Shown here: positions 3,230 to 53,633 of the stretch, piece after piece
Numbering within the stretch: the first letter of the stretch is position 1
Layout of the letters: the number at the start of each line of letters is the position of its first letter
From: Bispira polyomma
Lineage: Eukaryota
Direction: 5' to 3'
Assembly: GCA_965649765.1 (NCBI GenBank)
Contig: OZ287749.1
Location: 56,234,001-56,298,000 of the forward strand
Length of the DNA: 64,000 bases
Position numbers and translations under genes: made by a program
Notes under the pieces: model-generated
Told to the model about the DNA's origin: nothing
Seen by the model: only the letters and a program-made list of their open reading frames with translations
Database searches by the model: none

Positions 3230-3472
3230 CTTGGTCATGTGTTTGTAGTTGTTGTTCTGGCCTCGTTCTCCCAGCCCACAGAGCCCCATGCCAGACATGG
3301 AAACTTCTCTTTGAAAGGACTTCTTGGTCCTGTGTTCTTTTACCAACAGTTCACAGCTCAATGTCTTGATAGATCTCTCCAGTGACTTAATAGCCAAGGA
3401 AAGCTGCTGAATATCCGAGGCTTGACACTTATCCTCATTCTCAAGGTCGGATTTTGCTGGACTATCTGCCAT
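3230..3472 (-). CDS. First coding exon (81 aa) of a probable tandem pLGIC paralog continuing beyond the left edge
   Basis: 'ASDIQQLSLAIKSLERSIKTL' and 'REVSMSGMG' match exons 1A/1B; phase-0 donor AAG|gtttgt; possible acceptor ttttcag ending at 3596. No downstream exon lies in the window. Confidence 0.78.
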
Positions 3473-8065: not shown

Positions 8066-8807
8066 TTCAATTACTTCATCACCCTGACACTTTTCGTTTA
8101 GTTTCTAAGTCACCCTGACACCTTCCTTTCAATTACTTAGTCCCCTGACAATTGTTTTAGTCCCCTAGACACCTATCTTTTAATTTATTCGTCCCAAGAC
8201 ACTTCTCCTTTAATTTATTAGTCCCACATCGATTTCTTGGTCCCCCAGACACTTCCACTTTAATTTTCTTAGTCCCCCAGACACTTCCACTTTAATTTCC
8301 CTTCAGTTTCTTAGCCACACAGACACCATCTCTTCAATTACTTAGTCACCCTGACACTTACCCTTCGATTTCTTAGCGCCTCTGACATTTTTTTAGTCCC
8401 CCAGACACTTCCACTTTAATTTATGAGTCCCCCAGACACTCCCACTTCAATTTTTTTAGTCCCCTGGACACTTCCATTTCAATTTCTTAGTCCCCAGAAA
8501 CGCCCACTTTAATTTTTTTAGTCCTCCAGACACATCCCCTTTGATTTCTTAGTCTCCCAGTCACTTCCCTTTCAATTTCTTAGTCACCTTGAGAATTCGC
8601 CCTTTGATTAGTCCCCCAAACGCTTCCACTTTAACTTTCTTAATCCCCCAGACACTGACACTTCAATTTCTTAGTCCTCATGACACTTCTCATTCAAATT
8701 TATTAGTCCTCTTGACACTTCCCCTTCAATTCCTTAGTCCCTAGACCCCCCCCCCCCCCCATATTCCTTTAGTCCCCAAAACACCCCCCTCATCCCTTAG
8801 TCCCCCA
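8066..8807. repeat. Degenerate ~31-32 bp minisatellite (~25 units) in the pLGIC 3' UTR, overlapping the stop codon
   Basis: Recurring cttagtcccccagacacttccactttaattt unit. Confidence 0.9.
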
Positions 8808-9030
8808 TAGCCCCTCCAACAATTGCCACCTCCATGGCTTCAGCTTCATTCTCATCGATAGGGTTGACCTTTGTCTCTCTGCCTGACCAGCCATTCGAAT
8901 TGTCTCCTTTCTTCTTCTTCTTAGGGGTCGTCTCAAGAGACAGCTTCTTGTCCTCCTGTTGGGCCAGCTTGTCCACCTTCTTCTCGTGATCTCTCTGTTT
9001 CTTGGCAATGTGTCGCTTGTTGTAGCGAGA
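8797..9030 (-). CDS. pLGIC terminal exon (SRYNKRHIAKKQRDHEKK...VGGAMGD*, 77 aa)
   Basis: ttacag acceptor, open purine-rich phase-0 frame ending at TAA 8797-8799. The supplied ORF 8790..9056 is a different frame. Confidence 0.85.
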   Translation of the reverse strand, partial: SRYNKRHIAKKQRDHEKKVDKLAQQEDKKLSLETTPKKKKKGDNSNGWSGRETKVNPIDENEAEAMEVAIVGGAMGD

Positions 9031-12000
9031 CTGTAAGCCAAAATATATAAATACATATTAGCCTTCAGTGCTGAGGTCTGAGTTTAAACACAGTCATACA
9101 TGCTCAAGAGATATCATCTCTTGAGAAAGACCACCTTTATATAAAGACCACAGTTTTCGATTTCCTAAAACTAATGTTTAATATTATTTAACCTGTGCAT
9201 GCAAACTAGCTGTTAATTTGAATTTGGATATTTAACGTCCACTCTAGTACCTTTTAGTAGGTTATATTGGGACGGGTAGTTGGAAACGCTGGAGGAAACA
9301 CTGCATACAGTCGGTCAAGGTTCTGCAGAGAAACCAGCGGCCCACAGTAAGGAACTACCACCTTTCCCACATAGGCATCGACCGGATTCGAACTCACGGC
9401 GCCCAGAGGTGAGAGACCAGTGATTGTAAAGCGCAATGCTTGCTAACCACTCGGCAACTAGCTGTTAATAAAGACCATTCTGGAGGGTTTCCTTTGGGTA
9501 GTCTTTATACACATGTTTCACTGTATTGCTGTTCCAGCTTTTCACAATCTTACAGCTAGGTGAAGGGTTTTTTTCCATGGACGAGTACCTGGTTGTTTGA
9601 TAAATTTAGTGTTTATTATTTATTTGCACAGAGTAACAACAAACCTGAATAAATTTTGCAAATTCTATCACCCTTTTCCTTTATCAAGAAAATGTAGCCC
9701 ATTTTCTACCTTTGTGTAGTATCTAAAGCACTAATTAACCTTATTTTCTTGACTACCGAGCTGCAGCCAGCCATACAACTGTCATACCCTTAACTATTGT
9801 TTAGAACAGGTTGGGAGAGAGAGCAGGATTTTGTTTGAATAATACAAGGTTTGTGACAAAGAAGAGGCATTAAATAAATTATTACTAATTCTGTACTATA
9901 AGTAATAACTTATGACTACCAGTACTTTAAAATATAACCAGGGGAAAAAACTAAAGAGAACAAAATGCACACCAGAATGGAGATAAGAAACTGAATAATG
10001 TACAACAACATTTGATAAAAACTAACCATACAGGCCACAAAGACGAAAAATGACACCTGGAAACAGACCCACAGTGAGATTAAAATGCAGAAGGCAATCA
10101 AGTCTGAAAAATAGGCAAAAACAACCCCTGACACTTGATTTAAATGTGTAAAAAAGGTCACAGCAGGCCTTTTATTTATGTGTTTTAACAAGGTAAATCG
10201 TGAACTCTTTTTTTTTTTAAAAATACTGTAAAAGTGCAAGGTTTCATGAGGACTTTATTTTACTGATTTTAGATGATCAACTGGCATAGTAAATACTAAT
10301 TCCCCGTAAACATTTGAACTTATGTTAACATTTTAACTGAAAGCTCACAGATAGCAAATAGTGAAAAATTATCCCAACGAAATTTTCTGATACAGTAGTT
10401 TTAGTTTTACTCAAGCCTTTATATTCTAATGGTGCTGAGATTAGGCGCCCTAAAACGTTAGGATAGTTTACTTTAATTCTGTAACTATATAGTTGTAGCA
10501 GCATACTTACCGGCTTCTTCAGGAATTGAGTTTGGACTATCCTCTTCTCCATACTTCTCAAACAGTAAAAAGGCCACCACATGCCACAGTGTAAGAGTGC
10601 ACAGGAACAACATGGAGATGAGGATATATCTGTCCTACAACAGAACATTATGATACCATTTTGAAACAAAAAGCATGAACACGAATTTTTGTACAGGAAT
10701 GTATCAATATTAGGTAACAGATCAGAAGCTGTTACTTATATGAGTACATTATTAGTACTGTACTTAAGTATTTATCACATTTATCTTACATTTATGATTT
10801 GTGAGTTACAGTATCTTGCAAGATGTGTAGACAATATTATTTGGAATAAAAACATTTACATTTTAAAAACAAATTTTTAATTGGAATTAATTTTTCACAA
10901 ACCACACACTCGCTAAAATGGATTATACTGGAAATTTTTATTTATAGATTTCACGTGGTGAATGAATACATGTCATATAATCAAATAAATTACTGCAATT
11001 CCACAATGATTCTAGATTTTACTGGATAGGGAACGACCATGATGGAGTTTGCGTATCAACAGATAAAACTAATCCTGCTGTGATAGTAGTACTACTATCA
11101 ATGAGAACCGTGTGAACCCTGTCCAGTAAATTGTAGAATATTAATTAGCCGAACTTACCAAATATGTCAAGTAGGAAATCTTGGGCAGGTTGTGGGTGAC
11201 CACAAACTTAAAGGTGACCGTCGTCAGGAGTAAGATGAATGAGAGCTGGAGACGGTTAGGGATCTTCTCAATGTCCACAGCAAAGATAGCAAAGGAGAGT
11301 GAGCAGATGAACAGCTAAAAGACATAATATATTGACATAATATTGTATTACATTATGCTATGCCATGAGTCTTTGCTGGCGCTCTATATCTCTGGCGATG
11401 TGGCACTGCAATAACTATAGTCACGGTGATAATTTCCATTATTCAAAACAGTAGTCCTCAGACAAGTATACAGCACTTTAGCCCCTAAGAGTTCACTACA
11501 TCATCATGTATGAGCTAAAAGGTCAAGGTCTCATAGTACAGATAAACACACATCAACTAGATGCGCTGAAGTATTTCATTTGTTACTTATCCTATAAAGC
11601 ACACTACTTGTCGTGGCTCTGGCATTGTAGCTTTCTAATGCTTATTTGTTAATGATAGACAGCTCCTAAAGCACCACATCAAAATCGAGAAACCAAAGTA
11701 TAATCTGAAACTCAACAATCAAGTCGTAAACACAAAGGATGGAGTGTATTCAATTTTAAAATCCAAAAAATGAAAAGTGCTTATTAGAATTTATAAAGGT
11801 TATTATATGGGTAACATTAATTTGATATCCCTATGAATGACAGTGTATTGCATTGTGGACATTTTGAGGGCATCTTATTAATGCCAGGTATCTTCTAAAG
11901 TGAACATTTCCTGCAATTTTAGGGACACCATCTGTTTAACTGACAGTGCTTGGGGATTTTGTTCTGTTGATCAAAAGCTGAGTATTGTATTTATATCTTT

Positions 12001-14490: not shown

Positions 14491-14521
<31 letters not shown>

Positions 14522-16467
14522 GTGTTTGAGTATGTGTTAGCTCAGCACTAGAGTTTCTTCAAAATTAACATGTAGGAAGGTTTATCTTGGTGTTGATGTT
14601 ACAAAAAAAAAACTAGTTAACATGCAAATGATTGCTTTGGGCTACATTTCTTCAAGTTACACTTTTTAATCATTATACATACAATCTGGAAAAATCTTAC
14701 TAATTAACAGCATTTTTCATCCAGAAGAAAGGTCGTTTTCAGGTCATCAAAATATTAATGGGTTTTCCTATATGACGAGGTTTTAGAAACATATTAGTTT
14801 CACAGATATTTTAGCATATATATTCTGTCCCTAATTCTATAACTCTTAAACTTGTTAAGATGTTTGATTTAACAGGCAAAAATAAGCCCTGATTGATGCT
14901 GTTAAACCGTGCCCAAAAATTGGTAAAACCCTGTTTTACATTAAACAATAGTAGCATCTTGAAAATTAGTATATCTTTTAAAGTACTCTACGAAGAACAA
15001 TATATAAGATGATTTCTGTAGCACTTCAAATTTTGACTATGAATAAGAATTTTAACTATTGTTGGACTAAAGGTAGAAACGCACAGGGCCCCATCCGGAT
15101 CAGGATCCATCGAATTATCCGAAAACCTGGCCAAATCATGTGAAATTTCAAGCTACTTTGCAGGTGCTCGGTAGGGATCTAGAAACGGATCTAACAAAAA
15201 TTACAAATAAAATCCATGTAAATTTTATATGAACCGAATTAGCGGATCCAGATCCGTGTATGAATGCTTACACTGTTTCATTTTTGTCAAAGTTATACCA
15301 ATCCGCAATCCAGATCTGATTCGGCCTGTGTTAATGGACCTTTAGTTAACAGGTTGAAATCTTTTTCACAATAAGAGATAACTAGCAAATTACCCAACAG
15401 TAAAAAAATACATTCCAGTGATGTGATAAAAAGTATAAATGGTGAAATTTTATTCCAATCAAAAGTTGATTAATTGGAGAATAATATGGCTTACCATGAC
15501 AAAGAGTACATTCCATATAAAGAAGCCAGGTCTTCTGGAGGCCTTACAGGCAGCAGACAGGGCTGGGTGCTTATGTTTGGCATTCTGGAATACTTTAGTG
15601 GTGACCTGAAAGTAAACAAAGTGACAACAAGCTGAAAAAAAAACCTTTTCGTGACTGAAGAAAATCCAGGGCTAACAGGTTGCAGATAGGATTGGAGTCG
15701 CCAAAGCACACACAGCAGACATTTCATGATGACGCCCGTATACAAATTGCAGGGACAGAAGGAAAGTAAAATGAGCCTGCGTATATCATATTGCTTGTGT
15801 TTGTGATGTTGACCTTTTTGGGGTACTGGTTCATGACATATGCCTTCCGATGTGTTTCCAATAAGTTTCAACAATGTATCTAAACCTATTCAACTGCTAT
15901 AGGTTGTTGGCAGCCAATGGCATTCGTCACTCACAGAATCTATGTCGATTTGCAAGCAGTAAACACCCCCAAAGTATTATTTTATTTTCCTTCATTTACT
16001 CACAATAGGAAATTTGTTGGTCCCGTTTAAAAATGTAAAAGTGAGGCCATTATTGAATGCCGGAAGTAGTCTGTGGTGTGACTTTTAGTGACTTCAGCTA
16101 TCTGTAACCTATTACCTGAATATGATCTTTAGATCCCGACAATAGTTTTATCTTGGAGTTAAAAGGGGTAAAATAAAGTTTCACATGTGGTACCTTAAAG
16201 GCTAAAGTAATAATGACAATTACTTCTGCCCCATCCCTCCACCAAATTTCATTTAAATCTGTTAACTAGTTTTTTTGTAATCTTGGTTAACAAAACAAAC
16301 AACCGACAGTCAGAAACTCATTTGCAGAGGTAATGAAACTACTTCATTCTCAATAATTATCTGCAAATATTCCTTAGAAAGTTGATCAATAAGCATTATA
16401 AACTTATTCAGAAGCTATCGGAATTTTACTCTGATAGATTTCAGTAATAATTCACATGGATGCCCCC

Positions 16468-16498
<31 letters not shown>

Positions 16499-22400: not shown

Positions 22401-25400
22401 ATACTAAAGTCCGACGAAGTGCTGGCCCTACAAATCATATATCAAAATAAACATCAATCTTAGCCTGACATTTCAGTATAAATGAAAACAGGTCTGAACT
22501 GTTAATTTTTTTAGATATCTTGAAAAATAAATCCAAGATGACCGAACATTTCAGAAAGGCCCTTAAACAAATAGCTTCTGAAGATTTATCTTAGTGAATT
22601 GGCTTTCGGAATGCATTTAAAATTGTTAAGTAGTCATTCCCCTTTAATATCTGTGAATATTCACCAAAGTTATAAATGTTTACTACTTTTATGAATTTTA
22701 ATTGCAACCCTATCCATTATTTTCGTTTCTACCTTAAATACTCTGTAACCAGGAAGCCGGAAATAGTAAAATCACTCCATATACTCACTTGGTACAACAC
22801 AGGTATTGATAACTTCTTTTTTTTTTTAAATGTTAAACTCTTCTTTAATGATTTAAGACATGTCTGGAAAAAGACATGTCTGGACTCCAAACAACCCTAT
22901 GGATTGGTCAAACTTACCATATTATCTAGAAAGCTTATCTTTTGTCATAAATGCTATTAGTTCGCAGATGTCTTGTCTCAAACTTTATGAGTTTAATCTA
23001 TACATCTATGTAGATGTATTATGCCAAAAACATGTATTTGAGCCTCTTTAGAGTCGTTTCAGAGAATCTTGAAACCCCCCTGAGTTCTACAAATGCCTCT
23101 CTCTTGCTAAAATAGAATGAAATCCAGTAGAAGATGTATGTCAAGTATATATAAATCCTATATATATCTTTCTGGTATAATACATGTACCATGTGAAGGC
23201 CCTCAAAACATTTTCTACTTAAAGTAATTTTCTACACCTTTTTCTAGTTTCTTATCTTTAAATAACTTGATTCTGCTTTTAAAAGTACTTTCATCTCTTA
23301 AAAGCCTAGAAACCCAAAAAAAGAGATAAATGGGTCAGGGTCAAGCAAACCCCTGCAGTGAGATTGCTGTCAGACCTATCCTCAATAGACCATAATAGAC
23401 CCTTGGTGATAAGGTTTTAATATACATCCTTACTCTGTAAGACCTGGCAACAAAGGAGCTCTAACAAAAGAAATAGGGCATAGTGGATAAGAAAAATGTC
23501 ATTACATCAATTCAAGCATTACTTCATTTGACAAATGTCTTGTCTGGGCTTTTCGGTGTTTGCTGTCATGTTACGAGTATAATCCACAATCAACCATACA
23601 TTGTATAACCTTCTAATGTCATGACATGCTGGGTTAAATTCATGGCATTGCTTTGCCTTAGTCCAGATAATGGACCAGTATGTCCAGTTAGATTTACCTT
23701 AGTTCATGTCTCCACTGTACAGAATAGTTACCACTTATTACATGTTTACCTTAGTCCATGTCTCCACAGTACTGTGTAGTTGCCACTCCTGTTCATCCAC
23801 AAATGACTGCAGGTTCAGACCACAGATTTCTTTGTCGTCTTCTATAAACTCCACCTCGTGTTCTCCATGATCAGAGGACACTGTAACTGTCAGATCCTAC
23901 AAGTAGTTCAAGTTGTAGCACACGTGAATATAATGGCTTGGGTAAGGAAGGTATGAGAGTGTCATTCTCTAATACTTATTACCTCAACACACCAAACAGG
24001 TTATGTTTTTTACCTTTGTCCATTAGTTGGTTTGTGTATTTATCAACAGTAGTGTAAAAAAACGACAACAGTCAAATATGTTTTGTTTTTTTTATTTTTG
24101 GACACTGTGCTGGCTTGACGGGGTAATGTACTATACTGACTTTCCTTCTAATTCATTATTGTGTGTATTTTTGTAGTCAAGAAGATGTTTAGTACTCATT
24201 TGAACAGAATCAACACATAATACATAGTTTTGACAAGCCTGTTGTGTACACAAATAATTTATTCTTGCCCCATTTTTTTAATTTATAGACATAATATATC
24301 CAGCCTGATTCGAAGAAGAAAGTAGTATGTTCAACATGTTTATAGTACGATGATTTATACAGGATATTAGATTTTTAAGACCTGTAGAAATGGTATGAAT
24401 GAGACAAATGAATGTCATATTATAGAAAATATTAAGGACTTACTGTATCTAAGGGATAACAACACTACAAGATTTACAAGGTATGAAATAAATTTTATGC
24501 TAAAATAATCTATGTGAAGATCAATTATGAATAGAATTGTACATTTAAGTTACCACCTCTTTTCTATACATACTTACTGTTGCTGTTATAATTAGTTAAT
24601 CTGTTTTATTGTCTGTTTGTCATTTATGTAGTTACGATGTACTGTGAGTACGAAAATAAACTATTATTATTATTATTATTAAACCTGATTTTCAGTTAAT
24701 TTGAATACTTGAACACTTTGTCGACAAGAGATGAGAAACAAGTAAGATATTATACAACATGACATCATTAACTGATACATAGTTAATTGTTGTTTTGGCA
24801 TAATGCAACATCATATATATGTTCAAATTTACAGGCCCAAGATAAAGAGCTTAACAAAATACTCAGTTTAAATTAGTAAGTATGCACAACAGGAAACTGA
24901 GTAAAAAAATATGAACACTCTTGGAACAAAAGTAAAAGAAGTCAGACCTAATTTGAAGTAAATAGACATACTATCCAATATATCTACATTCAATTTGAAG
25001 TAATACCACACTTCAGAATATTTTAGCCTACAAGCCGCCTCTTACTTTCAAACAGAGGATAATAAGTTCACCCAGTTGACAAAGTCAAATTACCCTAGCC
25101 GCTTTGAACGATGAACAGTTAAACGTTAAACAAATACACATTTAATTCTACTAAAGACCACCCGCAAGAGAGGCTGCAGCTGGGGGTAAAATATTTTTAG
25201 AAAAAGAATTCACATTTATTTTCTATACAGTAGTCTGTTGGTAAATGGATGTTGTCAAGATCTGTAGGGCATGATGCAGATTTGCTGAAAAACATCAACT
25301 CACAAAGTTGAAACTTAGAGAGAAATTATAGTTTATGGCATAAATAAGTACATGTATGTTAAGAGAAGCATCTCAATGTGATGACATTGTAATAATGGTT

Positions 25401-29141: not shown

Positions 29142-29172
<31 letters not shown>

Positions 29173-35100: not shown

Positions 35101-38100
35101 CGAAATGTTTCTGGAACGATACCATCCATTAATCAACGTCATGGAACGAACGCACCAGAGATCCTCACTTTCTACTACATTTTAAAACGTTTCCAAAATT
35201 AACACAACATGACACAAACATAGCTCTAGAACGTGTAGGTGTGACCAGGTCATAAGCAACAGCTGGCTATGTGGGAAAATACTATCAGCACTAAACATCT
35301 CTCTGCAAGGTCACTTCTTGCATTGCTTCAGAAGGTCAATATTAACTTCAACACATTCAAACACATGGTTATTGGAAGTCTGATGCTGTTTGTTCCCACA
35401 TAGAGTGCACCTCACATGCTTCCTCTATTAACCCTTCCACCTTTGCCTCTATCATTCCACCTTTTTGTAGTTTGGCTTTGGCATTTCTCTTAAAATTTGA
35501 GTACAGTTGTATATATATAGAGAGAGAGGTGAGGTTTTATAAATAAATGTATTTAAGCCACAGACTTTCACGTTCAAAGGTCAAAACCTCATGCACATCT
35601 CATACCTCAGATCAAAGCTCAGCTAAGCTATATCATATCTGACCTTCAGGTTTTACCTCCTTGACCTGAGGTCAAAACATAACATTTAGTCACATATTTG
35701 AAACGATTGTATTAGTAACTGCATGTCACAGCATGACAGTTCAGTCGTGCAAATATAGACCTTTACGGTAAAACACCTAACAACAAATTGTTTATTTGTA
35801 TCACCCAATAAAAACAAATACACCACAACTAATACCTTGTTATTTAATGAGGGACTTATTCCTGCCTTTATCAGTGTGTGGGCATTAACAAACTGGAAAG
35901 CAAAGTGTACACACATGGGAAACTAACCCACCCTCCTATGGGTTATGTGTATGTCTAGTAGAGTTGGTATTATCCTCCGTATTGTATTTTAATTGACCCT
36001 ACTATTGACATTTCTCTAAATATTAAATTTCCTAAAATTCATGTACAGTTGTGTATATAGAAGCAAGGTTTTATAAATAAATTTATCCCAAACAGCTTTT
36101 AGACTTTTTCCCTTCGAATGTCAAAAGCTCACACTCATCACTCATCAAATAGCCTTATATGATGTAAATATAAAAAGAAATACATTTAATAAGGCGAAAC
36201 TGTTGGGTAAATAAAAACACCAAACTGAGATCTAGGTCTTTGAAGAAAATGTACTTTTAATGTCCTGTTACTTATAAAATTGTAACTGGTTTGATGCACT
36301 GGTAGTATATCCTTCTACCGTTAATTATGGTAACTCAACTGCAGGTATTGGCAGTTCATTAAATCTATTTAATGAATGATAAATTCAAACTGCTAGTAAG
36401 CATTTATTTAACATGCTGAAAGGAATATAAATTTCTGTTTTAAAGTATCTGCCTAGATCTCATAAAAAACATGGCGTCTTCCAGACTGCAAATGGGAATA
36501 CATGGTGAGACAGCAAAGAATGCTAGATTGTCCCATTGTGTATAATTTGTCTTTAGATACTACTCTTAGTAAGAAGTATATATGTGTGTCCCTTCTTTTA
36601 GGTCAACTTTTATCAAGGACTGGATTATAAAAACAAAAACATCATTACCTTTAAATGCCCACAAGAGAGATATTTGATATAGTCAGTATACTAAGCTTGG
36701 GATGTATTTTTGATTTTGATTGATATTTTTATCAGTCTATTTACTCATCAGGTGCATATCAAGTGGTTGAACACCCAATTTAAATTCTTACTGCTTCCAA
36801 TAGATATATTGACCTGACCATATTGAATAATCGTAAACAAGAGTTGTCTTTTTAAAAAGACACAGGAGCATAGTGTGAAATATACTAACGTTGATATGAC
36901 CACTATATATACGCAGGCCCCTAAAGCTGTAAAAGATAACAATAAATCTGACACCGCTCAGTTTGCTTGGGTCAATTGCTTCCAACCAATCCATGAAGGC
37001 CTTGCATATTTCTAGGATGGCAGATAGGCATATGCCTACACAAGTACTAAACAGTGGCTTTTAAGCTTCAATGTTGATGACTGTGTAATACAGACAGATG
37101 CCCACTGATGGCGGTACTTACAGTGTCCTTCTTATTGTCCAGTCTGGGTTCCCTCCATCGGCCATGGATGAACACATCGGCAGCGTATTTCTCATGGATT
37201 GTGTCGATCTCACCAATTTTAAGGAACACCACTCGAACATAGACTGTACGCTGTAAGAACATAGAAGATAGAATATGGAATTTATTAAGGTTTTACATCA
37301 CTTTTAACAGATTAGGTCAACATTACGACTGCCAGATCAACTGTTAATTGCATTAATATTACCCAATTGATTTTATATTCATAGTTATTTAATAATAGTT
37401 ATTTACTTGTTATTTTTAATGTTAATAATTTATGTTCTCGAATTCAGTGGAAGAAAAGAAAGACATAATACTTACTGATATGATATTATTAATATGTTAT
37501 GGCAAAAATTGAATGGCAACAAATTACATATTATTTCTTTTCTTGTGAATGCAATCTTAAGTTTATAACTAACAAAGTATTCAATTGCAACAGAAACAAA
37601 ATGGCTGAAAATTTTAGGCATATTGCATGTAATGACTGATTTCGCAGATTGACTGTAAATTTAGGTATATTACTATATTAGGTACACAACACAGTGTTAG
37701 ATTAAAGTCACATCTGTTTTAACATGGCCTTTCAGTTTTAATAACAGGCAACATCCACTTTATAATAACAAAAATAGATTTGGTGTGACTTTTTATAATG
37801 CTATTCTTATACTGAGTACTAAATGTACATCTTCATTAAGACTTCAATGTATTGAATGGATAGTAAGCTAATATAAAATAAAGTGATGTATTATAGTTGA
37901 GCTTACATTACTACTGCTGCTAATTAATGGTAGACGGCTTATGATAACACCACAGCAAAAAGATAAACACATGATGTCACACTGATCAATATTACAAGAG
38001 ATTAGGGAAATTTACATTGACAATAAAAAAATCCATGTAATAATACAACAAAAATTAGTGTGAAATCAACTGATACATTCAGCTTGTATTTAAGACTTAT

Positions 38101-41100: not shown

Positions 41101-44100
41101 TTAATGGGTAGGGACTTGCACTTACGTTAGTATTATTGAGCTTAAGTTTTCAACAGGACTTCAAAGCTCAGGGATTCAGACATACACCAGTAAATGTTTG
41201 ATGGAGTAGGATTTAAGGTTAAGAATTATTGCTTAAAAAATCCTAAATCAAAGTTAAGTGTTAAGCTATATTTATGAAAGGTATTTAACTCACCATAATC
41301 TCATCATAATTGTACTTTCGGGCTAGTATTTAGAGAAGAGATCTGCGACATTTAAGCCACATGGATCAATTTGTTGGTTCTTCATAAGTTAGCATTCACT
41401 AAAAAGTTAAGCTGATTTTTTGTTTAACTTTACTAAAAAGAGTTAAGTTCTGTCAACTTTTGACCCAACTTGAATTCCAAACATTCAGGTAGATTTAGAT
41501 ATGTATAAAATTTTGTTGCTTTCTTTATTTCGTTTGCGATGATGACATCATAATTTGAAATATTAATAAATTAACCATAAATTGTACATTGTTTACATAG
41601 TCTTTATATTTCAATATATGATGATTGTTTTCACAGTTTTAAGATTATAACTTATGAAGAAAAGTGACTTTTTTAGTCAACCTCAAGGATCAACATCAAG
41701 TTTTGGTTAAACTTTTTGAATCAATATTTACAGATTACAAAAATGAATTTCACAATATATATCACAATAAAAAGCAAAACGAGACATATCAGCATACATT
41801 AAATTAAATATAAATTTAAAATCAACAAATTTAAAACTATAAATTTTGAGGGTTTTAGGTGCAACTTAGTTCAAACTTTATCTAGCTGGATCAAATTATT
41901 GTCTGCTGACACTACTTTTTGAATACCAATTTGATGCAAAAGACTGAGCCATTTTAAGCTTATCTTGGTCTATCATGGTGAATATGGGCCTAAATATCTA
42001 TTTCTACAAAAATATGTCCAAAAAAATCTGACTGCGCACTTCAGTTCCTTATTGAAAGCACTGTTAAAAAGCAAGGTGACAGTTCTAGGTTTTGCATTAT
42101 GTATCCAATATTAAGGTTTAAGCATCAAAATGATGATTTTTAGTATGTATGGCATCTGGAGAGAAGCAGTATTTTAACTCTAACATTCCATTTCAGCATT
42201 AAATTGAATTTTTATTAAAAACTTTACAATGATACAAATCCCACAAAATTCTTTCAGACACCTTGATTGCCAAACACAATTACCAAAACAGGAAAGGAGA
42301 AAAAACGAACAGAGAAAAAAATAGTTAAAGTAAGAAAGGTATTGAACAGAAAGGTATTCTCTTTTAATTATGTCAAAGAATTATCCCTGGTTAAACAATC
42401 ATTCTTTTCAGGGCAACAAACAGTTGCTTAAAAAGTGACTGATTGAATTGTATTATAAGAAGCTGAAAAAATATTTACCTGTTTGTTCAAATGCCGATAG
42501 CTAAATTTACCGAGTTTGCATAGTTCAAAGCTTAACAGTAAAATATTTGTGAATGTTTAGCTCAAAGTAGATTTGACAAAAAAATAGATCTATTAAGGAT
42601 AAAACTTGAAACTAGGGATAACTTTAATTGCAATTATATATATATATACGATATACGAAAAAAAGTTTTGTGTTAAAAACGGTTTTTGATTTGATTCTTA
42701 GAAATGTCTCTTATGTGGAGCTAGAGATGAGTAACTTAATTCATCACTAAATAATAAACTGAACAGCTGCTATAGCCATAGCATACACATTGAACACTAT
42801 TGTTCACTAAATTCAATTTGTTCTCTCAAAAACTACCATAAACATTTAGTTAAAATAAACACACAAAATGATATACATAACATCACTTCTACTGATTTAT
42901 CTTAACAAATACACTCACTGCAATATAGTTCACTATTTTAAGTAATGCACGCTTTTAATATACTGCCCTATACAACCGACTGACGCTTTTCCCCTGACTG
43001 ACATCCCTTCAACACAAGAGTACCTTCTTTATACATAGTTTTATTAAACTTTTTTATATACTGCCAAAATTTTCTTTTTCACAAATATTGTTTTTTTTTA
43101 TCTATCTTTCATCTAAATTGTAAATGGACATTGGAGCAAAACCTACAAAATCCTGCAGCTGAAATATGATACCCTATACTCATAGAGAGCTATAAACCAT
43201 GCAAAAGTACAATAAGCAGCACCTATCAGAATGCATGCCTCAAGAAGACACTAAAACAATACTGCACCTTTATGCCGTCTGAGTTTTCTATATCGGTGGA
43301 GCCCAGTCCGACCATGGAGTCGCTGTGTCGAGTCCGTTTCCGTGTCAAACTTACACTACTACCTACAGACAGTCCGGTGCATAGTGTTTTGACGGCTGTG
43401 TCCAGAGACTTTATTGCAGAGGTCAGGGTGGATATATCCGAACTTGTAGCCATGATGATTCAGAATTCACAAAGATGTTATGTACAGAGTAAAGTACTGT
43501 CACATACAATTCAATGTAGTTCAGATATTTAGTTTTCCTTAAGTCTGTTTATTGTTTATAATTTCTTATGGCATATGGCATATAGCCTCTAAAGTCAAGC
43601 TTGCTTGTCACACATTTACAAAATAATATATCAGTCCTCATATTGTAGTATGAATTCATCTACAATTCCAATCCCAAAGTAGAGTTTTGTACATGTATTA
43701 CTCCCAACACCAATATATGTTCTGTCTTCTGTATTCTCTACTCCTTCTCTATACTCCAAAGATCACATGATTTGTACAGTCCACATGATGTCATTTTTCC
43801 TCCCTATGTTATAATACATCAAACACACTATTTATTGTTTTAGTCCCCCAGCCCCCTTCCTTCATGTTGTCATGCTCTCAGACTGATGACAAACAGCAAT
43901 TTATCCAGACGTTTGTTAAACATAGGTAGTGTGTATGTGTGTGCACTTTGCATATTGGTATCTGAATCCAAAACAAGGAGTCCTTGGTTAGCATGAAACA
44001 ACATCAGTGGAACATCCACACTTGGTCCTCAGGACTGATGATTTGGAGGAGGAGGTGGAAGATTAAATGTATTAAATAAGTTTCCAGTCCAACTGCTAAT

Positions 44101-47100: not shown

Positions 47101-50100
47101 TCCTGGGTTCTATTCCTGGTACCGGCTGCTAATTTCATTGGTTGGGTAACATCCTTGAGCAAGATGTGTACACACAGTTGCCTAGTGACTCGGATAAACA
47201 CTTAAAATTGCGGTCCTCTTTGACCTCGTCTATCCCCAGTTGCAAGATTAATACAGAGTATAAATCCGAATAAGATAAACCTTTAAAAGTTACTCTCTAA
47301 ACAAATTTTGTCGGACATGCTTAAAATACATATATGTGTATAAACAGTGTACAGTAATATATCAATGTTGATATGTACCATATGACTTATACGAGTAATT
47401 TTTTACGAGTGTATGGAAACAGGCCATTAGAGTAATCAGTTGCCTAATACACAGAACCCATCAGCTTTATTAGAACAGATGCTAAGTCTGTATATTGCCT
47501 GGAACTGTATTTGTAACCCAGTTCTGAATACATGGTCATTAATAACACCCTCATCTGCAGTAATGACTAGGTAAGTCCCAATGATTCCTTGTCACACGGA
47601 TTCACATGACATACAGGCCCTTAAAGCAAATGCCATACTCATTGTTGTTTCTTTTCCTGTACCCACGTGAAAACATTTTTTCTCTGGGGCCATGTCTATA
47701 TATATGCATCCAAGGTCACAAGCTTAAACTGTTGTTTGAACGCCAATACTACATAGTTTATTACATAAATCTCCTTATTCATGGGATTGTCCTATGCATG
47801 GTTACCATGCATTTTCAATGGAGCTTTTCAGTGATCAAGACACTCAAATATGTTTGTTATATTTTAAATACATTTGTACACAAAGATAGAGCATGGCTTA
47901 TTTTTGAGAATAGTGTTAGCTTAAGTTAGACACCCCAGACAATTCCTGGCCCTGGTCCCTAAATTCCCAGAAATATGAGTCAACACCTATATTCTAAATA
48001 AGACCATCAAGTACATATTCCTGCAGGGATTGGGCTCCAATGGGAATTCCAATGTCTTTTTGAACTGCTAGTATTATTAGTAGAGGTTATAAAACAAAAT
48101 TTTCTGAAAGTTCTATATGGGTCACATTATTTGTAATAAGGTAAACATTTACCCATAGTTTTAACTGTTTGTAATTTTTTACTAAATTGTTACNNNNNNN
48201 NNNNNNNNNNNNNNNNNNNNNNNNNNNNNNNNNNNNNNNNNNNNNNNNNNNNNNNNNNNNNNNNNNNNNNNNNNNNNNNNNNNNNNNNNNNNNNNNNNNN
48301 NNNNNNNNNNNNNNNNNNNNNNNNNNNNNNNNNNNNNNNNNNNNNNNNNNNNNNNNNNNNGCTGACATATGGAATTGGTTGGCTGACATATGGAAATCAG
48401 CACACAAACTGTCTTGCAGCAAGGATAATGGCCTTGCCTTTGGAAAAAGCAGAATTTAACAAGGGATATAACTAATGCACACAACTAATCTAATCCAAGT
48501 CTAATGAACAAATTTTGATATACTGGAACAACAAATTTTTTGACATTTTGCATTGACTCAAAACAGTTATTTTATTAAAACAGTTTTACTGGGTGGAAAA
48601 TGTGTCATTTGTATTTAGTGTTTCATCAATTTACCAGTGAAGTCCTTTGGGGGAAGCCGAGTAAATCATTCTTTATTACAAGCAGTTATTTTTGCCCGCA
48701 CGGTTTCCATGTGTATCATTGGTGGCAACTTATAGCCCAGTACCACCGGGCTTTACGTAAGCAGTCATTAAAAAAATCAATTTGCGTAGGGTTTGCGTGG
48801 TGTTGGCCGGAGCTGACATAATGTACATAAACATACATAAGCTGACGTGGGAGTTGACACACAAGCAATTTATAATTTCAAACTGAAATTTGGACATGCA
48901 AGCCAAGATTGATGCGGCAAGCCAAGTGATCAAAAATGTAGACTTGCGTACATCTATTTCTGAAAAGTGGTTTGACGTAGCCAAATGAGTGTTAACGTAA
49001 TATACATAATACAGCGTAATGATACATAGAAATTGATGTAGTATTATCTATATCAATGTAAAAAGTGTAGTCTTACAAAAGATTACGTAGAATATTGTAC
49101 TTATAACATCATAAATTATGTGATTTAATGTAATATTAGGGCCTTTAACGTGTCAATGTATGTAGTTTTATGTGTATGTGCATACAACAGCTTGCTAGTT
49201 TTCACAGGCATTGACGTACAAATGCGTGCATCTCTGCATAAGTGAACGCCTTTGACATAATAAAAAGTATAAATAAACTTCTGCTTGGGGCTTCCCACCT
49301 TTTGACTTTTGCATCAAATTTGTGCGACAGCCTTGCATGACTAACAGAGACTAAAGTAAATCCGGTGGTACTGGGATATTAAGGGTAAAATACTTTACGC
49401 ACTTTATGTTGGTTTACATGAGCTAACTAAGAAACATTAAACACTTTCTATAACATATTAGTCAAGTATAGTATTCATATATAATCACACACCGCCACCC
49501 CCACCCCCCACCCACACCCCCACCCATGAAGACATGGGTTATAGGATGACCATTTATAAACTTACACTGGGGGTAGGACTCAACGACAGATGGACCGCAA
49601 TATAAAGTGGTCACCTGAACCACTATGTGTGTTATTGTAATTATAGATACACACTGAGGTATACACAGTATATTACCAAATCTTATTCTAATACCAAGAG
49701 CACCGTTCTTGCTTATATTAAATGCACATCACACGTTCTTTCAAATAAAATATGTAGACACAGAAGGATTTATTATCCATGTCCTAAATAAGACTCAACT
49801 TGTACTGTATGCCTTGTTGTGAACACCACTGAACTACATGTATTACTAATATTTGATACAAACTTAAGTTCAGAATTTTTTTTAGAATTTTGGCATTTAG
49901 TTAGGTTTTAACATCACTTAGGTTATATTGTGTCTTAGGTCATATCACGATAGCCAGATTTAATGGTGAAGGAAGTCAGTGCTAAAGCAATGTAAACCAA
50001 CAGCCTATAGCAGGTACCTGACAAAGTTTCCCACCTGAAGGAAACAAACGGGATTGATTGGAAAACCTACTCGTGAGAGACCAGTGATTATGAATGAGAT

Positions 50101-53100: not shown

Positions 53101-53633
53101 GATATCTGGTATACTATATAGGAAGCTATAGATAACTGGTATACTAAATGGAAGGCTATAGATATCTGGTATACTATATAGGAAGCTATAGATATCTGGT
53201 AGACTAAATAGAAGGCTATAGATATCTGGTATATTATATATGAAGCTATAGATATCTGGTATACTAAAAAGAAGGCTATAGATATCTGGTATACTATATA
53301 GGAAGCAATAAATATCTGGTATACTATTGATATAAATCTATTATACTATTGGTATAAATTTGGCCATCACAATATCACTCATCCTGTTGAAAGCTGTGCA
53401 AGAACCCCAATCAACTCAAAATTCCAATTTAACTACAGCCCTACCTTGAACTTTTTGAAGCCCACTTCATCGGCGATAGTTCCAATACCTGACAGGGTAT
53501 TCTGCCTCTTCATCTGTTCTTTTCTCTTGTCTACCTTGTTCTGCACCGTATTCACACCTCCACTAGAATTGATCACTCCCTCCAGAGACTTGATGGCGGA
53601 GATGAGGGACTTGATCTCTTCTGATGTTGCCAT
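8797..53633 (-). CDS. Multi-exon gene: Cys-less (Pro-loop) pentameric ligand-gated ion channel subunit, ~453/454 aa, with two candidate alternative first coding exons
   Basis: Exons join in frame at canonical GT/AG sites. The product has pLGIC hallmarks: beta1-beta2 'VVFLKIGEIDT', 'RWREPRL', Pro-loop 'LELNQFPFDTQ', 'EQEW', pre-M1 'RRPGFFIWN', M2 'PNRLQLSFILLLTTVTFK', 'LPKISYLTYLDRY', four hydrophobic segments and a TAA stop at 8797-8799. Confidence 0.92.
9090..9523. mobile_element. Tc1/mariner-type MITE, paralog of 6312-6843, interrupted by a different SINE
   Basis: Colinear similarity to 6312-6843 including flanks; ends gtttcactg|ta. Confidence 0.75.
9217..9455 (-). mobile_element. Near full-length young tRNA-derived SINE
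   Basis: A box gccgagtggttag, B box gagttcgaatcc, (CAAATT)n tail, 13 bp TSD aactagctgttaa at 9204-9216 and 9456-9468. Confidence 0.9.
10027..10103 (-). CDS. pLGIC exon 8 (M4; (D)LIAFCILISLWVCFQVSFFVFVACM)
   Basis: tttcag acceptor, ATG|gttagt donor, 77 nt, phase 1/0; the split codon supplies the conserved Asp before M4. Confidence 0.87.
10511..10634 (-). CDS. pLGIC exon 7 (M3 and short acidic loop; DRYILISMLFLC...PNSIPEEA)
   Basis: ttgtag acceptor, CCG|gtaagt donor, 124 nt, phase 0/1. Confidence 0.9.
11159..11314 (-). CDS. pLGIC exon 6 (end of M1, M2, M2-M3 loop; LFICSLSFAIFAV...LPKISYLTYL, 52 aa)
   Basis: ttttag acceptor, TTG|gtaagt donor, 156 nt; M2 and LPxxSY motif. Confidence 0.94.
15495..15605 (-). 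CDS. pLGIC exon 5 (VTTKVFQNAKHKHPALSAACKASRRPGFFIWNVLFVM, 37 aa)
   Basis: tttcag acceptor, ATG|gtaagc donor, 111 nt; loop C, beta10, pre-M1 RR and the start of M1. Confidence 0.92.
16463..16541. repeat. Poly-C / poly-A / (AAAT)n simple repeat
   Basis: Direct reading of the sequence. Confidence 0.9.
17118..17705. mobile_element. ~590 bp non-autonomous TIR element (PIF/Harbinger-like)
   Basis: gctgtcacac near 17122 and gtgtgacagc at 17691-17700, TAA/TTA-type flanks, CpG-richer interior. Confidence 0.7.
17729..20926. repeat. Tandem segmental duplication, copy A (intron 4)
   Basis: Colinear near-identity with 20927-23790; duplicated spurious ORFs (17729/20927, 18620/21819, 19242/22860). Confidence 0.95.
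20531..20926. repeat. 65 bp minisatellite, 6 units, derived from the 3' end and splice donor of exon 4
   Basis: tgtataacc recurs at 20581, 20646, 20711, 20776, 20841 and 20906; the unit contains tttaccttagtccatgtctccacagtactgtgtagtt, as at 23745-23781. Confidence 0.95.
20927..23790. repeat. Tandem segmental duplication, copy B (ends inside exon 4)
   Basis: Matches copy A except for a TIR insertion (22348-22778) and absence of 19670-20123. Confidence 0.95.
22348..22778. mobile_element. 431 bp non-autonomous DNA transposon with ATAT TSD (Sola-like)
   Basis: Termini GGAGTGAgacTACTATT / AATAGTAaaaTCACTCC; atat at 22344-22347 and 22779-22782; empty site visible in copy A near 19145. Confidence 0.88.
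23750..23896 (-). CDS. pLGIC exon 4 (DLTVTVSSDH...FVDEQEWQLHSTVETWTK, 49 aa)
   Basis: ttgtag acceptor, AAG|gtaaac donor, 147 nt; continues FPFDTQ-DLTV and contains the conserved EW. Not in the ORF track; read manually. Confidence 0.92.
26558..26778 (-). mobile_element. tRNA-derived SINE, same family as 9217-9455, slightly 5' truncated
   Basis: Colinear similarity; 13 bp TSD tgcaaccgtaaca at 26545-26557 and 26779-26791. Confidence 0.9.
26795..27545 (-). mobile_element. L2/CR1-group LINE ORF2 C-terminal remnant
   Basis: 'LKLNPDKTEF', 'LGVTFDS', 'ICRSCYYHIRDI' and 'ALVSSSLDYCN' motifs with frameshifts. Confidence 0.85.
31189..31386 (-). CDS. pLGIC exon 3 (EPDDVDWTEYWN...LELNQFPFDTQ, 66 aa)
   Basis: aag acceptor after a pyrimidine tract, CAG|gtaaga donor, 198 nt; FPFD Pro-loop without cysteines. 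Confidence 0.93.
32340..32712 (+). mobile_element. Decayed Tc1-like transposase fragment
   Basis: 'RKSGR...SAQQ' and 'WKK..WTDETK' (first catalytic Asp motif), broken by frameshifts. Confidence 0.5.
33660..35480 (+). mobile_element. Decayed DIRS/Ngaro-type tyrosine-recombinase retrotransposon (RT plus YR remnants)
   Basis: RT motifs 'HRLILNL.YP', 'IAHAFRNL', 'WNYIGDL', 'LGLPINKNKLVPP'; YR motifs 'FAFFGFLRISNL' (~34570) and 'HGYWKSDAV' (~35365). Confidence 0.8.
34748..35252. mobile_element. PIF/Harbinger-like MITE nested in the YR remnant
   Basis: TIR cctggtcacacctacac / gtgtaggtgtgaccagg with TAA flanks; longer relative at 52055-52666. Confidence 0.85.
37122..37250 (-). CDS. pLGIC exon 2 (RTVYVRVVFLKIGEIDT...RWREPRLDNKKDT, 43 aa)
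   Basis: ttacag acceptor, gtaagt donor, 129 nt, phase 0/0; beta1-beta2 and WxDPRL-like motifs. Confidence 0.93.
40150..40380 (+). mobile_element. Degenerate SINE
   Basis: Core 'aagttggtagtagac..gct' and tail 'gatgttaaacccaaactaaac' shared with 44360-44545. Confidence 0.55.
43268..43453 (-). CDS. pLGIC candidate first coding exon 1A (MATSSDISTLTSAIKSLD...SDGIK, 62 aa)
   Basis: ATG at 43453; phase-0 donor AAG|gtgcag compatible with the exon at 37250; shares the AIKSL heptad motif with the other two N-terminal exons. Confidence 0.82.
44300..44655 (+). mobile_element. Degenerate SINE with a tandemly duplicated 3' part
   Basis: 44436-44546 is repeated at 44552-44654 (ccaacttttgtactctgatt...aaactaagctaataaaa). 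Confidence 0.6.
45777..46080. mobile_element. MITE with ~50 bp TIRs
   Basis: gcttccggatccgtcatccg..tgtccgttt is inverted as aaacggacatc..cggatgacggattcggaagc. Confidence 0.8.
47060..47285 (+). mobile_element. Degenerate tRNA-derived SINE (Meta/V-like core)
   Basis: B-box-like gggttctattcct, 'ccttgagcaaga' and 'tcggataa...taaa...ggtcc' core. Confidence 0.5.
48194..48360. other. Assembly gap (N run)
   Basis: 167 N bases. Confidence 1.
48736..49374. mobile_element. ~640 bp non-autonomous DNA transposon with CCCAG termini (CMC/EnSpm-like)
   Basis: TIR cccagtaccaccgg (48736-48749) / ccggtggtactggg (49361-49374); many internal (t)gacgt/tacgt motifs. Confidence 0.8.
52055..52666. mobile_element. 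PIF/Harbinger-like MITE, same family and orientation as 34748-35252
   Basis: Same TIRs, TAA/TTA flanks, colinear interior. Confidence 0.88.
53047..53327. repeat. 30 bp minisatellite (~9.5 units) with a 60 bp higher-order alternation
   Basis: gatatctggtatactatataggaagctata alternates with an ...ctaaa..gaaggctata variant. Confidence 0.95.
53445..53633 (-). CDS. pLGIC candidate first coding exon 1B (MATSEEIKSLISAIKSLE...GFKKFK, 63 aa)
   Basis: ATG at 53633 with an in-frame TAA upstream; acceptor ttttcag ends at 53659; phase-0 donor AAG|gtaggg; homologous to the exons at 43268 and 3230. Confidence 0.8.

What the first reader, a model, noticed from the sequence alone, without database searches (positions are those of the whole stretch)
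8797..53633. Signal-peptide-less, Cys-less pentameric channel whose features point to inverted topology (cytosol-facing ligand-binding domain)
Seen: neither start exon encodes a hydrophobic signal peptide; the Cys-loop position reads KGSFLEYLELNQFPFDTQDL with no cysteines; exons 2-5 contain no N-x-S/T sequon; the M3-M4 loop is only ~18 aa and acidic (EKYGEEDSPNSIPEEAD); M4 is followed by a 77 aa Lys/Arg-rich tail (SRYNKRHIAKKQR...PKKKKK). Established: canonical animal Cys-loop receptors have a signal peptide, a disulfide-bonded glycosylated extracellular domain, a long cytosolic M3-M4 loop and a short external C-terminus; Cys-less pLGICs are known in some invertebrates; the positive-inside rule favours basic flanks in the cytosol. 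Inference: both termini, and hence the 'extracellular' domain, may face the cytosol, giving a channel gated by an intracellular ligand or acting in an organelle.
Basis: partly seen in the sequence, partly recalled or inferred. Interest (0 to 1): 0.85.

Follow-up and report, generated by a model that had tools for sequence, protein, structure and literature searches.

The report
Signal-less Cys-less pentameric channel gene
This is an intact nine-exon gene for a subunit of a little-studied worm and mollusc branch of the pentameric ligand-gated channels; every member I could examine lacks a secretion signal and carries its positive charges on the 'wrong' side, so the family is predicted, but not shown, to sit upside-down with its ligand-binding domain inside the cell.

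Summary
A minus-strand gene of nine GT-AG exons (8797-53633) encodes a 454-aa protein, or 453 aa with the alternative first exon. It has the pentameric ligand-gated channel (pLGIC) fold but no Cys-loop cysteines. Neither start exon is hydrophobic. The M3-M4 loop is 17 aa and acidic, and a 77-aa tail follows M4, basic at its start. The assembly gap lies in intron 1 and touches no exon.

These traits hold across the family. All 46 full-length relatives (annelids, molluscs, a nemertean) lack a hydrophobic N-terminus. All carry more Lys/Arg on the ligand-binding-domain side (mean 10.1 against 2.6). Eight of eight mRNA-like contigs have an in-frame stop upstream of the start.

The clade is already described as "Cys-less Pro-loop receptors" (Jaiteh 2016). 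I found no paper that mentions the missing signal peptide or a reversed orientation.

A four-helix protein without a signal sequence, with a 240-aa N-terminal domain and these charges, is expected to insert with both termini in the cytosol. That puts the ligand-binding domain in the cytosol. I give this reading about 0.6. It rests on sequence rules alone: there was no RNA for this locus, no topology predictor and no experiment.

The parts
53445..53633 (-). First exon 1A (63 aa). ATG at 53633 and phase-0 donor. Acidic amphipathic helix motif (..AIKSLE..) followed by a basic linker; no hydrophobic stretch.
   Evidence: An in-frame TAA lies 6 codons upstream.
43268..43453 (-). Alternative first exon 1B (62 aa), 31% identical to 1A, with the same MATS..AIKSL.. 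motif and a phase-0 donor.
   Evidence: An in-frame TGA lies 2 codons upstream with no AG between it and the ATG. Use of 1A versus 1B was not tested (no RNA).
48194..48360 (.). Assembly gap inside the intron between exon 1A and exon 1B/2.
   Evidence: No exon or family match lies next to it.
37122..37250 (-). Exon 2 (43 aa): strands beta1-beta2 of the ligand-binding domain.
   Evidence: (Neur_chan_LBD, E 0.035).
31189..31386 (-). Exon 3 (66 aa): loop A through the Cys-less 'Pro-loop' FPFDTQ. It carries Ala where 48 of 48 aligned sequences (45 family members and 3 prokaryote-type controls) and 5 paralogues have Pro (W-N-A instead of W-N-P).
   Evidence: (341 clusters at E<=1e-3).
23750..23896 (-). 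Exon 4 (49 aa): strands beta7-beta9 of the ligand-binding domain.
15495..15605 (-). Exon 5 (37 aa): basic loop C, beta10, the pre-M1 Arg-Arg and the start of M1.
11159..11314 (-). Exon 6 (52 aa): end of M1, M1-M2 loop, pore helix M2 with the 9' Leu, and the M2-M3 loop.
   Evidence: Neur_chan_memb, E 6e-4; ELIC, E 1.8e-4.
10511..10634 (-). Exon 7: M3 and the short acidic M3-M4 loop (phase-1 donor).
10027..10103 (-). Exon 8: M4.
8797..9030 (-). Exon 9: the 77-aa tail after M4 (basic first half, acidic end) and the stop codon at 8797-8799.

Best explanation
[quoted passage not shown] Shown: the fold and the gating parts are those of a pLGIC. They comprise the beta-sandwich ligand-binding domain, the FPFD loop, the pre-M1 Arg, an M2 helix with the 9' Leu, the M2-M3 Pro and four membrane helices. 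By sequence the closest solved relative is bacterial ELIC. Inferred: there is no signal sequence, about 240 residues precede M1, the N-side of M1 is strongly basic, the M3-M4 hairpin is short and acidic, and a conserved basic helix follows M4. M1-M2 and M3-M4 should therefore insert as two hairpins with both termini in the cytosol. The ligand-binding domain, the N-terminal extension and the tail would then be cytosolic. Only two loops of about 8-17 residues would face outside or into a lumen. The channel would be opened from the cytosolic side by a ligand that is still unknown. The alternative first exons would give it different cytosolic regulatory N-termini.
For: Gene model: nine GT-AG exons with an open frame.

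pLGIC identity:
- Exon-wise Pfam and PDB hits.
- Relatives reach Pfam Neur_chan_LBD above its cutoff, and TIGR00860 and NF033918 at E 1e-16 to 1e-26.
- The AF2 model of relative P0027 has pLDDT 86.9 and matches GABA-A, GlyR and GluCl at E about 1e-21.
- The family profile hits ELIC at 2e-48.

No signal peptide:
- All 46 full-length members have a maximum 12-residue hydropathy of at most 1.66 before beta1. Complete control pLGICs score 1.92-3.19.
- Eight of eight intronless mRNA-like contigs have an in-frame stop upstream of the start and no hydrophobic N-terminus.
- All three start exons of this type in the window have upstream in-frame stops.
- A paralogue on contig C11 has a 195-aa hydrophilic N-extension and the ligand-binding domain in one exon.

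Charge:
- Lys+Arg on the ligand-binding-domain side averages 10.1 against 2.6 on the other side, and the bias holds in 46/46.
- Net charge of the M1 flanks is +2.78 (N side) against +0.74 (C side), in 45/46.
- Net charge of the M4 flanks is -1.74 (N side) against +3.04 (C side), in 44/46.

Other:
- There are exactly four hydrophobic segments.
- In the human membrane proteome, 89% of multipass proteins with a cytosolic N-terminus have an even number of helices. Translocated flanks longer than about 100 aa need Sec61, which a signal sequence or an N-in signal anchor opens (PMC13220792).
- The ligand-binding domain has no conserved Cys pair and no conserved sequon; 31/46 have no sequon at all.
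- Sequons are enriched in the M3-M4 loop: 12 observed against 5.5 expected, including all three loops of 32 aa or more.
Against: - There is no experiment, no RNA for this locus (the three runs found were DNA) and no dedicated predictor such as SignalP, DeepTMHMM or Phobius.
- Part of the charge bias is not diagnostic. The pre-M1 Arg and the M2-M3 Lys are also conserved in canonical receptors, where they face outside. The discriminating part is the basic tail against the acidic M3-M4 loop.
- Every characterised pLGIC, including the nearest solved relative ELIC, has its ligand-binding domain outside.
- The sequon shortage in the ligand-binding domain (20 observed against 42.5 shuffled) is ambiguous. 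It is mostly explained by conserved Asn in fixed contexts, but it could also mean avoidance of glycosylation in a lumen.
- The M3-M4 sequon excess rests on about 8 independent lineages.
- This copy has Ala at an otherwise invariant loop-A Pro, so it may be atypical.
Confidence: 0.6

Rival explanations
1. Canonical orientation. The ligand-binding domain is extracellular or luminal as in every known pLGIC and is translocated without a cleavable signal peptide, for example with M1 acting as a reverse signal-anchor or by an unknown route. The basic tail would then also lie outside.
For: All solved and characterised pLGICs are oriented this way, and the closest solved relative is periplasmic ELIC. 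Papers on this clade assume an extracellular domain (PMC4795631, PMC9874803). The shortage of sequons in the domain could reflect avoidance of glycosylation.
Against: It requires translocating 240-400 residues that include a foldable beta-sandwich preceded by a net +2.8 flank, plus a tail with 5 Lys/Arg in its first 15 residues, all without a signal sequence. Translocated flanks longer than about 100 aa need Sec61 (PMC13220792). The N- and C-extensions are Cys-poor, charged, Ser/Thr/Pro-rich regions typical of cytosolic tails.
Confidence: 0.27
2. Annotation artefact at this locus. A real upstream exon encoding a signal peptide exists, in the gap, upstream of 1A or elsewhere in intron 1, and splices to exon 2.
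For: There are no RNA data for this organism. A 167-base gap lies in intron 1. The genome sequence alone cannot exclude another first exon.
Against: The exon 1/exon 2 junction matches the contiguous sequence of the single-exon paralogue and of intronless transcripts. Eight of eight transcripts of relatives begin with the same kind of N-terminus after an in-frame stop. Three homologous start exons of this kind lie in the window. None of the 46 relatives has a signal peptide.
Confidence: 0.04
3. This copy is a decaying or non-gating duplicate, for example an accessory subunit or an unexpressed gene in a tandem cluster, so its features carry no functional meaning here.
For: It lies in a cluster of three paralogues on contig C2, among at least 10 paralogue loci in the genome. 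It alone has Ala at the invariant loop-A Pro. Intron 4 holds recent duplications of the exon-4 donor. Expression is unknown.
Against: The frame is open over nine exons with consensus splice sites. All other invariant and near-invariant family positions are kept. The unusual features belong to the family, not to this copy.
Confidence: 0.09

Closest known systems
Cys-less 'Pro-loop receptor' clade of invertebrate metazoans (Jaiteh, Taly & Henin 2016, PMC4795631)
   Same: There are no cysteines around the FPFD loop. The taxa are lophotrochozoan: named relatives include Capitella, Lottia, Helobdella, Owenia and Paralvinella. In a quick tree the window protein nests among annelid members.
   Different: Nothing differs at the sequence level; this gene is a member. 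The paper does not mention signal peptides or orientation, and it states that the biology of these channels is undocumented.
ELIC, the Erwinia/Dickeya ligand-gated ion channel (e.g. PDB 2vl0, 8d67)
   Same: It is the best solved match to the family profile (E 2e-48). It shares the lack of a Cys-loop disulfide, a short M3-M4 loop and a very similar M2 and M2-M3 loop.
   Different: ELIC-like prokaryotic sequences have a signal peptide, a periplasmic domain and a C-terminus that ends right after M4. The family has no signal peptide, has a 50-190 aa N-extension with a conserved helix and a conserved basic tail after M4, and has Asn rather than Glu just before M2.
Canonical animal Cys-loop receptors (GABA-A, glycine, GluCl, nicotinic)
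   Same: The overall fold is the same (Foldseek E about 1e-21, TM about 0.7), as are the gating elements.
   Different: Canonical receptors have a signal peptide, a Cys-loop disulfide, a glycosylated ectodomain, a long basic cytosolic M3-M4 loop and a short external C-terminus. The nicotinic control P0193 shows the sequence-level features of this list (signal peptide, Cys-loop, long basic M3-M4 loop, short C-terminus). None is present here.
Flatworm 'Cys-less' LGICs (schistosome Smp_336620 and others; planarian gabrg1/2), PMC9874803
   Same: They are a Cys-less FPxD loop family of unknown ligand in spiralians. RNAi of the planarian homologues is reported to give a seizure-like phenotype.
   Different: I did not test whether they are orthologous to this annelid and mollusc group. 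That paper reports Glu at M2 -2', whereas this family mostly has Gln/Pro-Asn-Arg there.
Channels gated from the cytosol (cyclic-nucleotide-gated channels, IP3 and ryanodine receptors); insect odorant receptors as a precedent for an inverted receptor family
   Same: This is a functional analogy only. If the prediction holds, a ligand-binding domain in the cytosol controls a pore, and a whole family has the opposite orientation to its relatives.
   Different: The folds are unrelated and there is no homology.

Membership tests
[quoted passage not shown] | N-terminal beta-sandwich ligand-binding domain (Pfam PF02931) | tested here: met
   Window exon 2 alone scores E 0.035. Relatives P0027 (41.3 bits), P0160 (35.6 bits) and the paralogue exon L004 (39.8 bits) exceed the cutoff of 26 bits; P0009, the closest named relative by the tree, scores 24.2 bits, just below it. 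The AF2 model is consistent.
[quoted passage not shown] | Four membrane helices M1-M4 with a pore-lining M2 carrying the 9' Leu | tested here: met
   There are four hydrophobic segments. The 9' Leu is invariant in 48 sequences. The M2 exon matches ELIC and GABA-A.
[quoted passage not shown] | Coupling elements: the FPFD 'Pro-loop', the pre-M1 Arg and the M2-M3 loop Pro | tested here: met
   These are invariant columns P161, D163, R238 and P295, and all are present in the window model.
[quoted passage not shown] | Assembly as a pentamer and ligand-gated ion flux | not testable with these tools
   This is inferred from the fold only.
Canonical metazoan Cys-loop receptors | Two cysteines 13 residues apart flanking the FPFD loop | tested here: not met
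   There is no Cys in this loop. Only one Cys column in the domain is conserved, and it is unpaired.
Canonical metazoan Cys-loop receptors | Cleavable N-terminal signal peptide | tested here: not met
   By hydropathy only: 1.47 and 1.16 here, at most 1.66 in 46/46 relatives, against 1.92-3.19 in controls. No SignalP run was possible.
Canonical metazoan Cys-loop receptors | Long cytosolic M3-M4 loop and short C-terminus | tested here: not met
   The loop is 17 aa here (family median 10). The tail is 77 aa here (family median 46).
Cys-less Pro-loop clade (Jaiteh 2016) | Cys-less FPFD loop, and grouping with lophotrochozoan Cys-less sequences apart from Cys-loop and prokaryotic ones | tested here: met
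   There are 341 clusters at E<=1e-3 and named annelid, mollusc and nemertean relatives. In a quick IQ-TREE the 45 members (44 relatives and the window model) form one group with SH-aLRT 99. The careful search did not finish.
Prokaryotic ELIC/GLIC-type pLGICs | Signal peptide, periplasmic domain, and a C-terminus ending after M4 | tested here: not met
   The controls P0185 and P0187-P0191 have these features. The family does not.
Membrane proteins with cytosolic N- and C-termini (the proposed orientation) | No signal sequence, an even number of helices, and net positive flanks on the N-side of M1 and the C-side of M4 | tested here: met
   applying rules from PMC13220792.
Membrane proteins with cytosolic N- and C-termini (the proposed orientation) | Direct evidence of orientation (tags, glycosylation, protease protection) | not testable with these tools
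   This needs wet-lab work.

The most novel reading that the evidence does not exclude
A whole clade of animal pentameric ligand-gated channels, present in annelids, molluscs, nemerteans and probably other spiralians, is inserted upside-down. These channels would work as receptors for a cytosolic ligand. The conserved basic residues at the tip of loop C hint at an anionic metabolite or second messenger. The conserved basic helix after M4 and the alternative N-terminal exons would act as cytosolic regulatory modules. This would be the first pLGIC known to be gated from inside the cell.
Probability: 0.5. Interest if true: 0.92.

Novelty: new variant of a known kind. Interest (0 to 1): 0.8.

Why it matters
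Every pLGIC studied so far, from bacteria to human synapses, senses ligands outside the cell. A family-wide reversal would add a new class of channels gated from the cytosol. It would also show that this fold can work in either orientation. It could explain why the Cys-less clade has stayed orphan: screens apply ligands from the outside. The prediction is cheap to test with tags, glycosylation mapping and inside-out patches. It concerns hundreds of genes in spiralian genomes, possibly including parasite relatives that have been proposed as drug targets.

Tried and rejected
- **RNA evidence for the 5' end.** The only runs that hold this locus (X1-X3) cover exon, intron and intergenic DNA evenly, so they are DNA and say nothing about transcripts.
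- **Domain fusions that would fix the compartment.** The long hits were false positives of the exon search, tandem gene-model fusions or otherwise uninformative.
- **Profile search for more distant relatives.** It returned essentially the same set. Atlas look-alikes point to rotifers, xenacoelomorphs and diatoms, but I did not examine them.
- **Sequon shortage in the ligand-binding domain as evidence.** I rejected it as ambiguous, because conserved Asn in fixed contexts inflates the shuffled expectation. The N-Q-S sequon at the end of M2 in 19 of 46 members is a conserved motif at the membrane edge and is likewise uninformative.
- **Basophilic kinase motifs in the extensions.** The count was 39 against 27 +/- 5 in shuffles, too weak to use.
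- **A three-helix reading with M4 not spanning the membrane.** I rejected it because of the 10-aa M3-M4 hairpin and the four-helix AF2 bundle.
- **A mitochondrial presequence.** I rejected it because the N-terminal helix is acidic.
- **The joined spliced protein.** It was assembled only inside scripts, from window coordinates, for counting, local tblastn and local MAFFT and tree work. It was not sent to any database search, fold or complex tool. Those were run exon by exon by reference, or on relatives and a single-exon paralogue.
Full report
**1. What is at the locus**

The window has 34% G+C and one run of N at 48194-48360. I built the model from stop-to-stop frames, the DNA at the junctions and tblastn with relatives. 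It has nine exons, all with GT-AG introns and an uninterrupted frame:
- exon 1A 53633-53445, or the alternative exon 1B 43453-43268
- 37250-37122
- 31386-31189
- 23896-23750
- 15605-15495
- 11314-11159
- 10634-10511
- 10103-10027
- 9030-8797

The products are 454 aa (with 1A) and 453 aa (with 1B).

The joined protein was built only inside scripts from these coordinates. It was never sent to a search, fold or complex tool. Those steps were done exon by exon by reference, or on relatives.

**2. The assembly gap**

The gap lies in the intron between exon 1A and exon 1B/exon 2. It is about 5.1 kb below the 1A donor and 4.7 kb above the 1B start. No exon abuts it. Neither tblastn with relatives nor the family profile finds anything near it. 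The exon 1/exon 2 junction also matches the uninterrupted sequence of a paralogue whose N-terminus and ligand-binding domain lie in a single exon. Nothing is missing from the protein, and frame across the gap is irrelevant. A tiny unseen exon in the gap cannot be formally excluded.

**3.

All are correct:
- The loop that carries the two cysteines in Cys-loop receptors has none.
- The two start exons reach a 12-residue hydropathy of only 1.47 and 1.16.
- The single sequon of the whole protein is in exon 1A.
- The M3-M4 loop is 17 aa with seven acidic residues and one basic residue.
- The tail after M4 is 77 aa with 18 Lys/Arg, 11 of them in the first 30 residues.
- Hydropathy finds four membrane segments and no more.

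**4. What it is**

Single exons give only weak Pfam hits: Neur_chan_LBD at E 0.035 and Neur_chan_memb at E 6e-4. The M2 exon matches ELIC and GABA-A receptors.

An exhaustive search with exon 3 found 341 clusters of relatives. Named ones come from annelids (Capitella, Helobdella, Owenia, Paralvinella, Dimorphilus), molluscs (Lottia, Haliotis, Mya, Elysia and others) and a nemertean. Many are annotated 'cys-loop ligand-gated ion channel-like' or 'proton-gated ion channel-like', that is, named after ELIC and GLIC.

Most full-length relatives tested pass the Pfam threshold for the ligand-binding domain (P0009 falls just short at 24.2 bits against 26) and hit the LIC and LGIC_1 models. An AlphaFold model of the compact relative P0027 is confident (pLDDT 86.9, pTM 0.77). 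It superposes on GABA-A, glycine and GluCl receptors at E about 1e-21. The family profile matches ELIC best (2e-48), then GLIC and GABA-A gamma-2.

Invariant columns include the FPFD loop, the pre-M1 Arg, the 9' Leu of M2 and the M2-M3 Pro, Tyr and Thr. The gating machinery is therefore intact.

In a quick tree the 44 relatives and the window protein form one group (SH-aLRT 99), apart from prokaryote-type and nicotinic controls. The window protein sits among annelid sequences (the careful search did not finish).

This is the 'Cys-less Pro-loop receptor' clade described by Jaiteh et al. 2016, whose biology they call undocumented (PMC4795631).

**5. The unusual features belong to the family**

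I aligned 46 full-length members, including the window model.
- None has a hydrophobic N-terminus: the maximum 12-residue hydropathy before beta1 is at most 1.66. Complete control pLGICs found in the same searches score 1.92-3.19 and end right after M4.
- The median M3-M4 loop is 10 aa with 0.9 Lys/Arg.
- The median tail is 46 aa, with 5.2 Lys/Arg in its first 15 residues and a recognisable basic motif followed by K-D-R-E-Y/H.
- Lys+Arg on the ligand-binding-domain side (pre-M1, M2-M3, after M4) exceeds the other side in 46/46, with means of 10.1 and 2.6.
- Net charge of the M1 flanks is +2.78 (N side) against +0.74 (C side), in 45/46.
- Net charge of the M4 flanks is -1.74 (N side) against +3.04 (C side), in 44/46.

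**6. Are the N-termini real?**

Eight intronless, mRNA-like contigs from seven public runs encode family members. All eight have an in-frame stop upstream of the open frame, and none has a hydrophobic stretch.

The window holds three homologous start exons of this type: 1A, 1B and the first exon of the next paralogue downstream, at about 3230-3472. Each has an in-frame stop 6, 2 or 1 codons above its ATG.

The genome (1.04 Gb) holds at least ten paralogue loci. The copy on contig C11 has a 195-aa hydrophilic, basic, proline-rich N-extension and most of the ligand-binding domain in one 354-aa exon.

RNA from this organism was not available. The three runs that hold the locus are DNA.

**7. How it most likely sits and works**

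Established rules say the following:
- A multipass protein without a signal sequence is oriented by its first helices and their flanking charges.
- Translocated flanks longer than about 100 aa need Sec61, which a signal sequence or an N-in signal anchor opens.
- Closely spaced helix pairs insert as hairpins with short outside loops.
- In the human membrane proteome, 89% of proteins with a cytosolic N-terminus have an even number of helices (PMC13220792).

This family fits that pattern exactly. It has a large N-terminal domain, a basic N-flank of M1, two tight hairpins (M1-M2 and M3-M4) and a basic C-flank of M4.

The inferred orientation puts the N-extension, the ligand-binding domain, the M2-M3 loop and the post-M4 helix in the cytosol. 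Only the M1-M2 and M3-M4 turns would face outside or into a lumen.

Observations consistent with this, though not decisive:
- The domain has no conserved cysteine pair and only one conserved, unpaired, juxtamembrane Cys.
- It has no conserved sequon, and 31/46 members have no sequon at all.
- Sequons are enriched about twofold in the variable M3-M4 loop, including all three loops of 32 aa or more.
- The N- and C-extensions have the composition of cytosolic disordered tails.

AlphaFold continues M4 as one long helix through the basic tail, which would run along the outside of the ligand-binding domain.

The ligand is unknown. The tip of loop C carries a conserved basic K/R-x-H/K-x-P motif, which would suit an anionic ligand, but this is speculation. 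Ion selectivity cannot be read from the sequence, because the position before M2 is Asn, not the Glu of cation channels or the Pro-Ala of anion channels.

**8. Weak points**

- No orientation experiment and no dedicated topology predictor were available.
- The pre-M1 and M2-M3 basic residues are also conserved in ordinary receptors.
- The positive-inside rule has exceptions in eukaryotes.
- All known pLGICs face the other way.
- The sequon shortage in the domain is ambiguous.

This copy also has Ala at the loop-A Pro. That Pro is invariant in 48 aligned sequences (45 family members and 3 prokaryote-type controls) and is kept in five paralogues of the same genome. It may therefore be an atypical or accessory subunit.

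I put the inverted orientation at about 0.6. The canonical orientation by an unconventional route gets about 0.27, and a missed signal exon about 0.04. Separately, about 0.09 goes to this copy being a decaying or non-gating duplicate.

**9. Novelty**

The gene is a new member of a clade known since 2016. Six full-text searches and the key papers turned up no mention of a missing signal peptide, a charge inversion or a cytosolic ligand-binding domain for this clade. Papers on it speak of an 'extracellular' domain by default.

The family-wide prediction therefore appears new. It is easy to test, and it would be unprecedented for the superfamily.

Noticed in passing
window about 3230-3472 (-), continuing past the left edge (G000:C2:56216912-56234018): This is the first exon of the next paralogue downstream. 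It has the same kind of signal-less N-terminus with the ..AIKSLE.. helix motif and an in-frame stop one codon above its ATG. Its exon 2 straddles window position 1-18. With a third copy on the plus strand at C2:56185280-56197783, this makes a cluster of three.
   Followed up: partly
window 31366-31368 (-), exon 3: The codon GCT (Ala) stands where 48 of 48 aligned sequences and five paralogues of the same genome have Pro in the W-x-P motif of loop A. It is a single-base difference from CCT. I could not check whether it is a true substitution, an allele or an assembly error.
   Followed up: partly
window 17728-20400 and 20926-23562; 20531-20892: Intron 4 holds a tandem duplication of about 3.2 kb (95-98% identity). 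It also holds six copies, at a period of about 65 bp, of the last 37-43 bases of exon 4 with its donor site.
   Followed up: partly
window 53051-53327: A 30/60-bp minisatellite (9 copies, 85-91% matches) lies in intron 1, about 120 bp below the exon 1A donor.
   Followed up: no
window 54635-55285 (or 54690-55340): A 649-bp segment is absent from contigs of all three DNA runs. It is flanked by about 50 bases that fit both sides, so it looks like an insertion/deletion polymorphism or a repeat collapse upstream of exon 1A. Very high-copy repeats lie at 58550-58749 and 59150-59349.
   Followed up: no
L016 (G000:C13:6405620-6405900): The paralogue on contig C13 has a stop codon in place of the Gln that ends the FPFD-loop exon, plus other deviations. 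It is probably a pseudogene.
   Followed up: no
L004 (G000:C11:12249000-12254000): This paralogue has only one intron in the region covered. Its 195-aa N-extension is rich in Pro, Lys, Arg and Ser and contains PxxP-type motifs. It is possibly a retrocopy-derived gene.
   Followed up: partly
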